Below are positions 3,346 through 55,201 of a stretch of DNA of 56,333 nt, in pieces. The stretch covers positions 1 to 56,333 of the forward strand of contig RBZT01000504.1 in NCBI GenBank assembly GCA_003693705.1, read 5' to 3'. Each line of letters starts with the position of its first letter. Positions within the stretch are counted from its first letter, which is position 1. This DNA comes from Polymyxa betae A26-41. Taxonomy: Eukaryota > Protista > Endomyxa: Phytomyxea. Both the position numbers and the translations under genes were made by a program. The notes under the pieces are model-generated. The model was given only the letters and a program-made list of their open reading frames with translations. It was not told where the DNA came from and searched no databases.

Positions 3346-3916
3346 GAAATAATATATTTTTAAAATACTGTAAGAATTTTTTTAAACCTCTTTGTTTGGT
3401 ACTCCGTAAATCTTACCGAAGTAAAAAAACGTTTGGCATTTTCATGCTTTAACGCATTCTACTCACTGGTCGTTCCGTTTGATGGTGCCGGAAAATATGT
3501 TACAGTACTACAGTATACGGTTTTCCAAAGGAAATTTCAAGTACATTCGGCAGCACCTCGGCCTTAGAGATCGATTTGACATTGGTGCCGAATTTTTGTT
3601 ACGGGTTGGATCAGAAACCCGAAAATAAAAAAATACAAATGAGAACAGTCGAGGGCGGTCCTGGTATGCATGTGCTTGCTCGTTGCGATACAATTTTTAC
3701 GTCACTGACCTCATTGTCAATGTGATTCCTTTCGATTCCACCTCTGTTGTAAGCAACGAAGGCGAAGCTTGGTCGTCAGGAGGTCCCTTCGTCAAACGTC
3801 CAAGACCGCAACGATGCTACTTGCGCAGTTCCATTTTGGCGCCAAAACGCCCACCTTCATTGCTGCTCGAGTTTAGCATAATCAAATTGTTTTCGTGAGG
3901 GACGACATCGACAACA

Positions 3917-34490: not shown

Positions 34491-35196
34491 GCAGGCGCTA
34501 GGTCTTAGACTTGTGTGATCTACCGATCTTTCTCAAGAGAACTATTCAAGAAGTCTGTATTTTTTAATATTCCTTTAGAACAGAGCACCAGGAGCCAGGA
34601 TGCTCATTACCAATCATTCAGAATATGTCCAGGATCAATCATTAACGGGTAGATTCGTCTATAAACGATTTCGTACACTAACCTCCCCCAATTTAAGTTT
34701 TTGACAGAAGGGAGATTTCTGTGATAAATACGATGACGATATACTCCAGGCCTTTTGATTTTGTTGTAATCTATCACTGTAATAGTTACCAATTAACGAA
34801 AATAAGTTGGAAATTTACCAAAGATAAAAGTTATTAATAAATACAGTTTAGGACTTTAGGCTGGCAAAAATTCTGATAAAACTTAATATGAACCGCTTGA
34901 TTCGCGGTTTTAGCGAAAACCGACATTTGTTTTAGAAAGATGTTGTACTGAAAGTTGCTTTCGAACGAGCGGGAGGTCTTCACGATAGTTTCTATGTGTG
35001 ACCTCTATCCAAATCGTTTTGACACACACAGCGGCTTCATGAGAAACGAATGTCCACTTTGAAAAAACCGGTTGGATGATTTGTTATTCGAATCAACTGT
35101 ATTAGGCTTGTAACGATAGACATAGATTGATGTGGTGGCATGCGATCTGTAAGGCGAAGTCCATCAGAAAACAGGCGCTGAGTGATTGCAGGATGG

Positions 35197-36133
35197 TCAT
35201 AAAGTCAAGTGCATCGGCTTCCCTTTGGTATTTTCGCCCTTGTTAGTTTCATTATGAGCAGTCCATTCCATAGGCAGCTTGATCGAAGGCTCGATATCTT
35301 CAAGAATTGCTTTTTTAATAGCTCTGCCCAGAGCTAGAATTTTTTCCCTGTTATCCGAACTTGAAAAAATCAGACAGCCGGACCATGATGGATAGTTATC
35401 ATATACCTTCTATTCCAAATAGCGATTCGATCAGTAGCCCGACGACGAGAAACAACAGCACCGCAGATCTGAATTTTAAGACGCTGCAATCAACAATACC
35501 CAGCATTACATACCTCATTTCCGCTGGGGTCTATTGTCTCTCCGATTATTCCAAAGACGAGGTTCTCCCACACCTTATCGAGTTGCGATCGGTCATGCTT
35601 GACATAAACAATCTACAAGCTTTTACAAATGCTATGTGATAATGAAAATCAGGGACATTACCCTATAAGAGCATCCATTAGTCAGAAGATGAAGCTATTC
35701 AGAAAATAAGCCTCGTTTTACCATTTTCCGCCATTTTCGTTATTAGGGTCCTCCCACATTGGCTGGATGCCTTTCTTAAACAGATGATAATTGCTTTTAT
35801 AATCAAGGCAGCTTGGCAAAATGCAATGCCTGTGATATCTGAAAGCAAACGACGTTAGTTCCGATAAAAGCAAAGACTTTCTAGAGAGAACGAGACGCTG
35901 CAAACGCAAAACATTTTGTTAAGCGTGCAAACAGAAGTGCCTGACCTCCAGAACATTTCAATAGTGTCGAATGAGCCGACTCTTTGCAAATGCGATTTCC
36001 AATCATCGGCGTTACCGGCAGGAGCGCCAGCCGGAGTCTGATAGAACCATAACGTCCATGGCGACTGTAATGGATGTAAGCCAGCGCCTGGGTCGAGATC
36101 GGCTGATGCCAGGATGGGCTCGTCCCCGGCCAT
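35197..36133 (-). CDS. EIF4E: Eukaryotic translation initiation factor 4E family protein (includes 1-nt exon at 35662)
   Basis: HPLQSPWTLWF, FDTIEMFW, YHLFKKGIQPMWEDP.N.NGGKW, WENLVFGIIGE, ICGAVVS, DRIAIW. Confidence 0.95.
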
Positions 36134-36382
36134 TGGCGAGAATAACACGAATAACACGGTATAACAACCGCGGATGGAGGGACAGAATATTTAACAAGAC
36201 AGGTGAATGGAAAGTTGTTAAGGCACCACTTGACCCCAGATTAAGCAGTATTTAATCAAACTGTTAATAATAAGATGAAAGTCAAAGCTCAATACTTCAG
36301 CCAATAAACGAATAAAGTGTTACCACTACAAAGATCGGAACACTCTGATTACAGAACAATCAATGGATATTTGCCAGGAGTT

Positions 36383-53731: not shown

Positions 53732-55201
53732 TTACACAGCCATGTCCATTTTGATAGGCGGATGGGGATTGTACCCTTCTAGGACGAAATCTTCGAAGCG
53801 GAACGCGTCGGGGGCGGTATCACTCGGCGCCGAGATCGTCAGTTTGGGGAACGGGCGCGGGTTCCGCTCGATCTGCTTGCGAAGGGCATCGACATGGTTT
53901 AGGTAAATGTGAGCGTCACCCAGGACGTGAATGAACTGGCCCGGTTCCAGGTCAGTGACGTGAGCCAGGATCCGGGTGAGAAGCGCATAACTGGCGATAT
54001 TAAAGGGGACTCCCAGGCCCATATCACAGCTTCTCTGGTACATGAGCGATGACAGGCGCCCGTTCTCAACAAAGAACTGCACGAACATATGACAGGGCGG
54101 CAACGCCATCTTCGACAGATCTGACAGGCAACATCAGCAAACCATGTACCGGCCAGGAATGGACCAGTACGAACCCGCAGGATTCCAAGCTGACATCACA
54201 ATACGACGGTTTTCCGGTTCGGTCCGAATCTGACGAACGACTTCTGCGAGCTGATCGACGCCCTGACGCGCGTAATCGGCGCTGCAATCCGTGTATTGGG
54301 CGCCAAAGTGTCGCCATTGGAACCCATAGACGGGTCCCAGATCGCCGGGTCGGCGATGGTGCAGACCGCGAGAGTCGAGAAATTCCCGGGACCCGTTCCC
54401 ATCCCAGATCCGGATCCCTTTAGCACTGAGTTCGTTCCCATCCGTACAGCCTCGCAGGAACCACAACAGCTCCTCGACGACGCCCCGCCAGAACACACGC
54501 TTCGTAGTCAGCAGCGGGAACCGGTCGCCGCTCAGATCGAATCGCATCTGGGCGCCGAACAGCGCCAGTGTACCGGTACCGGTCCGGTCGTCGCGTTTGA
54601 CGCCTTCGCCCAGAATCCGCCGAATCAATGACAAGTAATGATGTTCCTCGTGAGGCAGCGGGGACGGCGCCAGTCGCCGAACGAAAGTGCTAAACGCGAA
54701 CGTTTCGTCGCCATCGGTCTGCTCTTCGCCGGCATCAGCCTCGAGAAAGACGGCCGAGTCGATTTCCGGAAAGAACGCATCATACTTGGCATGGCCGGGA
54801 CGTTCCTGAACCCGTGTCACATGCAGGACGTGGCAGTACGGCCGCTTGAGAGCATCGGCGTACACCGACTCGCCACCAATCACGAAAACGCGGTCGATGG
54901 GCGGGTCCTGAACCTGCAGTAATGCCAAAGCCTCGTCTAAGCTCGAGGCAGTGATCACGTCGTCGCCGAATCGCGTACTCGACTGGGTCAGCACGACGTT
55001 GATACGATCGGGAAGCGGCCGATATCGTTCAGGTATTGATTCCCAAGTACGGCGTCCCATGATGACCGCATTGCGCCCAGCGCCGATTGTCAGGCGCTTG
55101 AAGCGGCGCAGGTCTGCCGCGATACGCCAGGGCAAGGCGCCGACAGAACCGATCCCGCGCGAGATCGATGAAAATGCCGCCACGACCTCGATCGACATCA
55201 T
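53732..55201 (-). CDS. DHFR-TS: Bifunctional dihydrofolate reductase-thymidylate synthase (1 intron)
   Basis: [24 protein letters not shown]; [53 protein letters not shown]. Confidence 0.98.

What the first reader, a model, noticed from the sequence alone, without database searches (positions are those of the whole stretch)
35613..35721. Single-nucleotide exon in eIF4E completes the conserved GGKW tryptophan
Seen on the minus strand: GGC GGA AAA TG|gtaaaac...ctgactaat...ttatag|G|gtaatg...ttgtag|ATT GTT TAT. Splicing the outer sites directly gives TG+A, a stop with a frameshift. Two ordinary introns (35721-35663, 59 nt; 35661-35613, 49 nt), both typical in size here, flank one G at 35662 and restore TGG and the frame (GGKWIVYVK...WENLVFGIIGE). 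Established: 1-nt exons are extremely rare. Inference: intron-definition splicing permits this, and skipping would act as a poison switch on a core translation factor. Automated annotation likely misses it.
Basis: seen in the sequence. Interest (0 to 1): 0.8.

Follow-up and report, generated by a model that had tools for sequence, protein, structure and literature searches.

The report
One-base exon in protist eIF4E gene
A cap-binding translation factor gene of the beet-root parasite Polymyxa betae needs a single G, sitting alone between two ordinary short introns, to complete a conserved tryptophan codon. The mRNA contains that G, and a second genus has the same layout, so this is a real but rare kind of exon that gene finders will miss.

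Summary
On the minus strand the sequence reads AAATG|gtaaaac…ttatag|G|gtaatg…ttgtag|ATTGTT, exactly at the stated coordinates.

- **mRNA:** A 785-nt spliced transcript contig from public run X1 (depth 94) lacks all introns and joins exon 2 to the next exon by skipping 108 of the 109 bases. The mRNA therefore reads AAA TGG ATT and is in frame.
- **Organism:** The genome matches the Polymyxa betae draft by contig count and size (1,001 contigs, 27.09 Mb).
- **Conservation:** A GC-rich, Plasmodiophora brassicae-like orthologue (L007) has the same exon lengths (117/1/99/62). It also has the same AG|G|GT between introns of 58 and 53 nt, while its intron sequence is otherwise diverged.
- **Chance:** A chance AGGGT in the right place occurs in about 1.5% and 2.5% of shuffles.
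- **Rivals:** A single intron would need TA–AG ends. An assembly error would have to recur in two species.

My best reading is a constitutive 1-nt exon (about 0.88).

One-base exons are already known in Arabidopsis APC11, Fusarium CYP621A and 13 Coprinopsis genes. This is therefore a new member of a known kind, and I found no report of one in Rhizaria. The "poison switch" idea is untested. The scan holds other unchecked microexon notes for this genome.

The parts
36134..36168 (-). 5' UTR (at least this much)
   Evidence: Transcript contig of run X1 reaches 36168; the ATG is at 36133.
35946..36133 (-). Coding exon 1 (188 nt), from the ATG to …FDTIEMFW + AG
   Evidence: Translation; Pfam IF4E positions 1-38; contig piece 35946-36168.
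35839..35945 (-). Intron A, 107 nt, GTCAGG…AACTAAC…TTTCAG
   Evidence: Joint that skips 107 bases in the transcript contig. The orthologous intron in L007 is 58 nt.
35722..35838 (-). Coding exon 2 (117 nt), ends …GGC GGA AAA TG
   Evidence: Translation; Pfam IF4E positions 40-76; aligns to human eIF4E residues 77-112 in 1ipb_A; same length in L007.
35663..35721 (-). Intron B1, 59 nt, GTAAAA…CTGACTAAT…TTATAG
   Evidence: Sequence; absent from the transcript; L007 counterpart is 58 nt, GTACGT…TTCTCAG.
35662..35662 (-). One-nucleotide exon G, third base of the Trp codon (residue 102; human W113 by alignment)
   Evidence: AG|G|GT context. The mRNA keeps exactly one G at the junction. The same AG|G|GT is at L007 3462-3466. 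Chance is 1.5% and 2.5%.
35613..35661 (-). Intron B2, 49 nt, GTAATG…TTGTAG
   Evidence: Sequence; absent from the transcript; L007 counterpart is 53 nt, GTGTGG…CTGAT…TAACAG.
35514..35612 (-). Coding exon 4 (99 nt), IVYVKHDRSQLDKVWENLVFGIIGETIDPSGNE
   Evidence: Translation; Pfam IF4E positions 82-107; contig piece 35514-35612; same length in L007.
35469..35513 (-). Intron C, 45 nt
   Evidence: Joint that skips 45 bases.
35407..35468 (-). Coding exon 5 (62 nt)
   Evidence: Contig piece 35407-35468; same length in L007.
35360..35406 (-). Intron D, 47 nt
   Evidence: Joint that skips 47 bases.
35197..35359 (-). Last coding exon (163 nt including TGA at 35199-35197)
   Evidence: Sequence. The local frame check gives 630 nt, 209 aa and no internal stop.
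35150..35196 (-). 3' UTR (continues beyond 35150)
   Evidence: The contig piece reaches 35150 and the record runs 73 nt further.

Best explanation
This is an expressed, class-I-like eIF4E gene of the plasmodiophorid Polymyxa betae. The third base of a conserved tryptophan codon (GGKW; human W113 by alignment) is a constitutive one-nucleotide exon, G35662. It lies between two ordinary U2-type GT-AG introns of 59 and 49 nt.

**Shown.** The mature mRNA is …AAA TGG ATT…, with exactly one G between exon 2 and the next exon. The only placement of that G that uses canonical splice sites is G35662. A second genus has the same layout.

**Inferred.** The 3' splice site of the first intron and the 5' splice site of the second are 1 nt apart. 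Two spliceosomes can hardly sit on both at once, so the introns are probably removed one after the other, in either order.
- If B1 goes first, this leaves …TGG|GTAATG, a normal 5' splice site with a full-length upstream exon.
- If B2 goes first, this leaves …TTATAG|GATT, a normal 3' splice site.

This works in an organism that recognises very short introns as units (intron definition). It resembles recursive splicing, except that one base is kept. The arrangement predates the Polymyxa/Plasmodiophora split. It is held in place because TGG is the only Trp codon.
For: 1. The sequence is exactly as described.
2. Transcript contig X1 (785 nt, depth 94, no mismatches) has four joints: 47, 45, 108 and 107 nt skipped. 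At the site of interest the exon-2 piece is 118 nt (117 + one G) and abuts 35612 with no letters in between.
3. The gene is single copy in the assembly, so the transcript is not from a retrocopy.
4. With the G included, the model is 630 nt, 209 aa, with no internal stop.
5. Orthologue L007 (GC 0.589; P. brassicae is 58.5% by PMC6328671) has exons of 167/117/1/99/62/148 nt and five GT-AG introns of 58, 58, 53, 64 and 59 nt. It has AG|G|GT at 3462-3466. P. brassicae introns average 60 bp (PMC4471660).
6. Introns of the two species are 38-55% identical, against 69-73% for exons. The shared AGGGT is therefore not leftover similarity.
7. A chance AGGGT in a suitable place occurs in 1.5% and 2.5% of shuffles.
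8. Other verified introns in this gene are 45 and 47 nt. A rough open-frame junction scan of the dynein gene suggests 45-49 nt. So 59 and 49 nt are ordinary sizes.
9. The genome was sequenced on Illumina MiSeq at 225x.
10. There is precedent for the same AGGGT one-base exon in Fusarium. A one-base exon was also proven by mutagenesis in Arabidopsis.
Against: - No read or experiment shows that the G in the mRNA is G35662 rather than G35721 (a TA-AG intron) or G35613 (a GT-TA intron). The aligner itself reports the joint as slidable by one base.
- No partly spliced intermediate was seen. My only reads call went to one contig run and three raw runs that held no reads of this organism.
- Only one other species could be compared. 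Its identity as P. brassicae is inferred from GC content and similarity.
- Intron B2 has no clear CTRAY branch motif near its 3' end. It contains two unused AGs (35633-35632 and 35621-35620).
- The neighbouring 107-nt intron is removed whole, so a double-length gap is not in itself a sign of a hidden exon.
Confidence: 0.88

Rival explanations
1. There is one 108-nt intron with non-canonical ends. It is either TA…AG (35720-35613, keeping G35721) or GT…TA (35721-35614, keeping G35613). The internal AG-G-GT is then a coincidence.
For: The transcript joint is reported as 'skips 108, ends CT..TA, both = 1', which is exactly these two placements. A 107-nt intron in the same gene is removed as one unit, so introns of this length are processed here.
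Against: - In L007 the same logic gives TA…AG or GT…CA, so only TA-AG fits both species. A UA 5' splice site is not a known spliceosomal class (my own knowledge).
- Both species have a good canonical donor one base upstream (TG|GTAAAA, TG|GTACGT).
- Both species have an internal YAG|G|GT that yields two typical-size introns. The joint chance is about 4e-4 if the two are independent.
Confidence: 0.06
2. The assembly has dropped a G at the donor. The true sequence is TGG|GTAAAAC, so a single canonical GT-AG intron of 109 nt explains the mRNA.
For: RNA cannot show intron sequence.
Against: - The assembly is Illumina MiSeq 2x250 at 225x coverage. A GG/GGG error is unlikely there.
- An independent assembly of a different species (L007, a Logan contig) has the same two-G donor, AAATGGTACGTG, and the same internal AGGGT.
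- The exonic bases of the contig match the assembly with no differences.
Confidence: 0.02
3. The outer canonical sites are spliced, giving TG|ATT, and a G is added afterwards by insertional RNA editing. Alternatively, the transcript comes from another, intron-less gene copy.
For: None specific. This is listed only because the mRNA holds a base that the outer sites do not supply.
Against: - The gene is single copy in the assembly.
- I know of no nuclear insertional editing in this group (my own knowledge).
- Editing does not predict a conserved internal AG-G-GT.
Confidence: 0.01

Closest known systems
Fusarium CYP621A one-nucleotide exon (Nelson & Syed 2026, PMC12940212)
   Same: - A lone G in the identical AG|G|GT (AGGGT) context.
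- It sits inside a codon of a conserved motif.
- The gap is about twice the typical intron size, in an organism with ~50-60-nt introns.
- It is conserved across orthologues and supported by spliced RNA.
   Different: - The Fusarium case is a fungal P450, and the G is the middle base of a Gly codon.
- This case is a rhizarian eIF4E, and the G is the third base of the only Trp codon.
- Only two species were compared here, against 20 or more there.
Arabidopsis APC11 single-nucleotide exon (Guo & Liu 2015, PMC4674806)
   Same: A constitutive one-base exon between two GT-AG introns that is needed for the reading frame and was missed by annotation.
   Different: - The base is an A, inside a 422-nt gap with long plant introns.
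- It was proven by substituting and deleting the base in reporter constructs. No such test exists here.
Ultra-short exons of Coprinopsis cinerea (long-read annotation, PMC12230235)
   Same: A small-intron organism with many microexons, including 13 one-nt, 57 two-nt and 27 three-nt exons. Leaving them out often creates a premature stop.
   Different: That was a genome-wide catalogue in a basidiomycete fungus. This is a single gene in a protist, with conservation between genera shown.
Recursive splicing at ratchet points (zero-nucleotide exons) in Drosophila long introns
   Same: A 3' splice site is directly followed by a 5' splice site. Removal is stepwise, with a splice site being reconstituted or used after the first step.
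   Different: - There AG|GT are juxtaposed and nothing is kept; here one base is kept.
- There the introns are tens of kilobases; here they are 59 and 49 nt.
Fungal spliceosomal twin introns, 'stwintrons'
   Same: A complex intervening sequence in a short-intron organism that needs two consecutive splicing reactions.
   Different: In a stwintron an internal intron interrupts a splice signal of the external intron and no exon base lies between. Here both introns carry complete signals of their own and are separated by an exon base.

Membership tests
One-nucleotide internal exon between two spliceosomal GT-AG introns | The mature mRNA holds one base at the junction that the outer canonical splice sites do not supply. 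| tested here: met
   The transcript contig skips 108 of the 109 bases. The exon-2 piece is 118 nt rather than 117, and nothing lies between the pieces.
One-nucleotide internal exon between two spliceosomal GT-AG introns | A base of the right identity lies between an AG and a GT inside the gap, and both resulting introns are canonical and of workable size. | tested here: met
   TTATAG|G|GTAATG, with introns of 59 and 49 nt. Verified neighbouring introns are 45 and 47 nt.
One-nucleotide internal exon between two spliceosomal GT-AG introns | The AG-N-GT is conserved in orthologues although the intron sequence diverges. | tested here: met
   L007 has TTCTCAG|G|GTGTGG with introns of 58 and 53 nt. 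Introns are 38-55% identical and exons 69-73%. Only one other species was available.
One-nucleotide internal exon between two spliceosomal GT-AG introns | Changing or deleting that base changes the mRNA in the same way (the APC11 test). | not testable with these tools
   This needs a minigene experiment.
One-nucleotide internal exon between two spliceosomal GT-AG introns | Partly spliced intermediates or two separate lariats are found. | not tested
   The single read-laying run returned one fully spliced contig. Three raw RNA runs held no reads of this organism.
eIF4E family (Pfam PF01652) | The IF4E domain matches above the curated cut-off. | tested here: met
   Exon 1 scores 34.5 bits and exon 2 49.5 bits against a cut-off of 28.7. 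The genome search gives 86.3 bits over profile positions 37-130. The closest PDB hits are eIF4E and 4EHP.
eIF4E family (Pfam PF01652) | Class I pattern: Trp at the positions of human W43 and W56 (classification from my own knowledge). | tested here: inconclusive
   Exon 1 reads …SPWTLWFYQ… and …DDWKSH…, which fits class I. However, exon 2 is closest to 4EHP structures. No full-length alignment was made, because the joined model was not searched.
Recursive splice site (zero-nucleotide exon) | AG and GT are directly juxtaposed and no base is retained. | tested here: not met
   One G lies between AG and GT and is retained in the mRNA.
Stwintron | An internal intron interrupts the donor, acceptor or branch signal of an external intron. 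| tested here: not met
   Both introns have intact GT, AG and upstream signals of their own. The outer pair alone would give TGA.

The most novel reading that the evidence does not exclude
The one-base exon is also a conserved regulatory weak point. If the G is skipped, the junction reads TG|ATT in P. betae and TG|ATA in the P. brassicae-like orthologue. Each is an immediate TGA. Regulated or stress-dependent skipping would then produce an unproductive, decay-prone transcript and tune the dose of this eIF4E paralogue. Nothing here excludes this. Nothing supports it either, beyond the fact that the stop arises in both species, which follows automatically from TG plus an Ile codon.
Probability: 0.08. 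Interest if true: 0.75.

Novelty: new member of a known kind. Interest (0 to 1): 0.55.

Why it matters
- **Lower limit of exon size.** This case shows that limit outside plants and fungi, in Rhizaria. It also shows that such an exon can be stable across genera rather than a short-lived accident.
- **Annotation.** Any pipeline or aligner that cannot place a 1-nt exon will truncate or frameshift this eIF4E at a conserved tryptophan. The same probably applies to other genes of plasmodiophorid genomes, whose introns are about 45-60 nt. The scan holds dozens of further microexon notes for this genome, all unchecked.
- **Mechanism.** It is a compact natural substrate for asking how a spliceosome handles a 3' and a 5' splice site one base apart.

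Tried and rejected
- **Raw RNA runs X9, X12 and X19** carry the same species label as X1. They had 0 reads on the gene, so they do not hold this organism. I suspect the label is the host's. They are no test.
- **Word searches with exon-bearing open frames.** The window frames found nothing. The L007 frame found one unrelated eIF4E fragment with GGKW uninterrupted. The length window of that tool excludes full-length eIF4E when the query is one exon.
- **Whole-library phmmer with exon 1** gave three likely orthologue fragments. Only one (P0002, giving L007) had retrievable DNA.
- **Metagenome scan with the exon-2 alignment** returned three loci, none an orthologue. L008 has an intron four codons upstream of GGKW, and L009 and L010 are AT-rich and intron-less.
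- **Synteny between L007 and the window** was not detectable beyond the gene itself.
- **Paralogues** L001, L002 and L004 have no intron at GGKW, so they give no hint of origin.
- **PDB alignment of the 33-aa exon** was too weak to fix the register. The Pfam coordinates were used instead.
- **Joined spliced model.** All searches were exon by exon, by reference. The join was made only inside local scripts to check length and frame, and it was not printed. For the same reason the annotated P. brassicae protein was not looked up by exact sequence.

Full report
**What is in the sequence.**

Read on the minus strand, window 36133-35197 holds a six-part coding region of an eIF4E-family protein. Exon 2 (35838-35722) ends …GGC GGA AAA TG. 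It is followed by:
- GTAAAAC…CTGACTAAT…TTATAG (35721-35663, 59 nt);
- a single G (35662);
- GTAATG…TTGTAG (35661-35613, 49 nt);
- ATT GTT TAT… (35612 onward).

Every base and coordinate in the finding is correct. The flanking translations are …KGIQPMWEDPNNENGGK and IVYVKHDRSQLDKVWENLVFGIIGE…. Both match Pfam IF4E. Exon 2 ends at profile position 76, and residue 5 of the next exon lies at position 82, so by extrapolation one position, the tryptophan, is missing between them. In human numbering (1ipb_A) exon 2 covers residues 77-112. The PMW tryptophan is therefore W102 and the split codon is W113. Joining the outer GT and AG directly gives TG+ATT, a TGA.

**Which organism.**

The window's assembly has 27,085,814 bases in 1,001 contigs. 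The Polymyxa betae draft genome is described as 1,001 contigs, 27,085,946 bp, GC 45.1%, from MiSeq 2x250 reads at 225x coverage (PMC6328671). A DHFR-TS fusion gene in the window fits a non-opisthokont protist (the taxonomic meaning is my own knowledge). I take the organism to be P. betae, a plasmodiophorid (Rhizaria) and obligate root parasite of beet.

**RNA evidence.**

Four runs of one study hold 51-61% of the sampled words of the gene region, which is about its exonic share. Laying X1 gave one 785-nt contig at depth 94 with no mismatches, in five pieces: 36168-35946, 35838-35721, 35612-35514, 35468-35407 and 35359-35150. The joints skip 107, 108, 45 and 47 bases.

At the site of interest the exon-2 piece is 118 nt, that is 117 plus one G. 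The record positions are contiguous, so the mRNA reads AAA TGG ATT. The tool reports the ends of the skipped part as CT..TA with one base of slide. This is what an aligner must do when it cannot place a 1-nt exon.

- With that G, the model is 630 nt, 209 aa, without internal stops.
- The gene is single copy in the assembly, so the contig does not come from a retrocopy.
- The three raw RNA runs offered under the same species label held no reads of this organism and are no test.

**Which G?**

The mRNA alone allows three placements:
- G35662 between two GT-AG introns;
- G35721 with a TA…AG intron;
- G35613 with a GT…TA intron.

Comparison with a second species decides between them as far as sequence can. 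A phmmer search with exon 1 against 1.84 billion representatives found three close fragments. One of them (P0002) lies on a 35.5-kb Logan contig, fetched as L007. L007 has GC 0.589, close to the 58.5% quoted for Plasmodiophora brassicae. I call it P. brassicae-like by inference.

Its gene matches ours exon by exon. Its exons are 167/117/1/99/62/148 nt, giving 197 aa without stops. Its five GT-AG introns are 58, 58, 53, 64 and 59 nt, in line with the published mean of 60 bp for that species. At the homologous place it reads AAATG|GTACGT…TTCTCAG|G|GTGTGG…GTAACAG|ATATTG.

The lone G between AG and GT is therefore present in both genera, while the intron sequences are only 38-55% identical against 69-73% for exons. 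In dinucleotide-preserving shuffles, an AGGGT that leaves two halves of at least 40 nt arises in 1.5% (P. betae) and 2.5% (L007) of cases.

For a single intron, the only reading that fits both species is TA…AG. That requires a 5' splice-site type I know of nowhere. It also ignores good canonical donors one base upstream in both species.

**Assembly error.**

A dropped G at the donor (TGG|GT) would make one canonical intron. I could not lay DNA reads. Against this reading:
- the assembly is deep Illumina data;
- the same two-G donor and the same internal AGGGT occur in an independent assembly of another species.

I give this 2%.

**Intron sizes.**

Verified introns of this gene are 45, 47 and 107 nt. 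A rough scan of open-frame junctions in the neighbouring dynein gene suggests 45-49 nt (heuristic, not verified). Thus 59 and 49 nt are ordinary sizes and 108 nt is about double.

The 107-nt first intron is a caution. It is removed with nothing retained, it has no internal AG|GT, and its L007 counterpart is 58 nt. A double-length gap is therefore only a hint.

**How it most likely works.**

Shown: the mRNA, the canonical signals, and their conservation.

Inferred: the 3' splice site of B1 and the 5' splice site of B2 are one base apart, and U1 pairing at the second site would cover the AG of the first (general knowledge of U1/5' splice-site pairing). The two introns are therefore probably removed in succession. 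Either order leaves a normal site, …TGG|GTAATG or …TTATAG|GATT. This suits an organism that recognises very short introns as units.

B1 has overlapping CTGAC and CTAAT branch-like motifs about 17-21 nt from its AG. B2 has no clear CTRAY near its end and has two unused AGs. This is a weak point of any model that uses the final AG.

Paralogues in the same genome, and unrelated eIF4Es, have no intron at GGKW. The intron pair is therefore a lineage-specific gain that predates the Polymyxa/Plasmodiophora split. How it arose cannot be read from the saturated intron sequences.

**What is known.**

One-base nuclear exons have been reported three times in the papers I could search:
- Arabidopsis APC11, proven by base substitution in reporters (PMC4674806);
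- Fusarium CYP621A, with the very same AGGGT, conserved in 20 or more orthologues and seen in RNA reads, called there 'the second example' (PMC12940212);
- the long-read annotation of Coprinopsis cinerea, which lists 13 one-nt, 57 two-nt and 27 three-nt exons (PMC12230235).

No paper in the library links plasmodiophorids with microexons. This scan holds 45 first-reader notes on microexons in the same genome, all unchecked. They are a lead that this genome may be rich in very short exons, not evidence.

The finding is thus a new member of a known kind. It is the first I can find in Rhizaria and in eIF4E, and it is conserved between genera.

**What is not supported.**

The 'poison switch' is untested. 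Skipping the G would give TGA in both species, but that follows automatically from TG plus an Ile codon, and a contig cannot show minor isoforms. 'Core translation factor' should be softened: the genome has four eIF4E-family loci, three of them class-I-like by their tryptophans and one 4EHP-like. 'Annotation misses it' could not be checked. The announcement paper reports no gene annotation, and I could not search the full-length model.

Searches were made exon by exon, by reference, and the join was made only in local scripts for a frame check and was not printed.

**Verdict.**
- One-nucleotide exon: about 0.88.
- Single TA-AG intron: about 0.06.
- Assembly error: about 0.02.
- Other readings: about 0.01 or less.
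- Interest: 0.55.

Noticed in passing
window 35839-35945 (minus strand): The first intron of the same gene is 107 nt and is removed with nothing retained (joint skips 107). It has no internal AG|GT. Its counterpart in L007 is only 58 nt. The sequence ...GCAG|C|GTCTCG would leave a C that the mRNA does not contain, so that reading is not supported as a hidden exon. Why it is double-length in P. betae alone is unexplained.
   Followed up: partly
window 35632-35633 and 35620-35621 (minus strand, inside intron B2): Two AG dinucleotides lie 19 and 7 nt upstream of the AG that is used and are not used in the transcript. No clear CTRAY branch motif lies near the 3' end of this 49-nt intron; the only CTGAT is 36 nt upstream. 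The branch point of B2 is therefore unclear.
   Followed up: no
window 54137-55201 (minus strand): An open frame with DHFR followed by thymidylate synthase domains on one polypeptide. This fused DHFR-TS is typical of non-opisthokont protists (my own knowledge).
   Followed up: no
G000 contigs C539, C698, C630 (loci L001, L002, L004): Three further eIF4E-family genes. L001 is 4EHP-like (Tyr at both class-defining positions) with an uninterrupted domain. L002 and L004 are class-I-like and have introns elsewhere. None has an intron at GGKW.
   Followed up: partly
L007 3405/3518 and window 35722/35612: Skipping the lone G would create TGA at the junction in both species (TG|ATA and TG|ATT). This follows from the Ile codon that comes next, so it is not evidence of regulation.
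   Followed up: no
L008 870-1100: A metagenome eIF4E from an unrelated eukaryote (GC 0.51) has an intron-like interruption between …MWEDAANAN and GGKWVITMK. That is four codons upstream of the plasmodiophorid position, so this loop region has been hit by introns more than once.
   Followed up: no
whole genome (scan notes): The scan holds 45 first-reader notes that name microexons in this genome (2, 4, 5, 7 and 9 nt, among others) and one on a zero-length exon. All are unchecked. Together with this verified case, they suggest that a systematic cDNA-based catalogue would be worthwhile.
   Followed up: no
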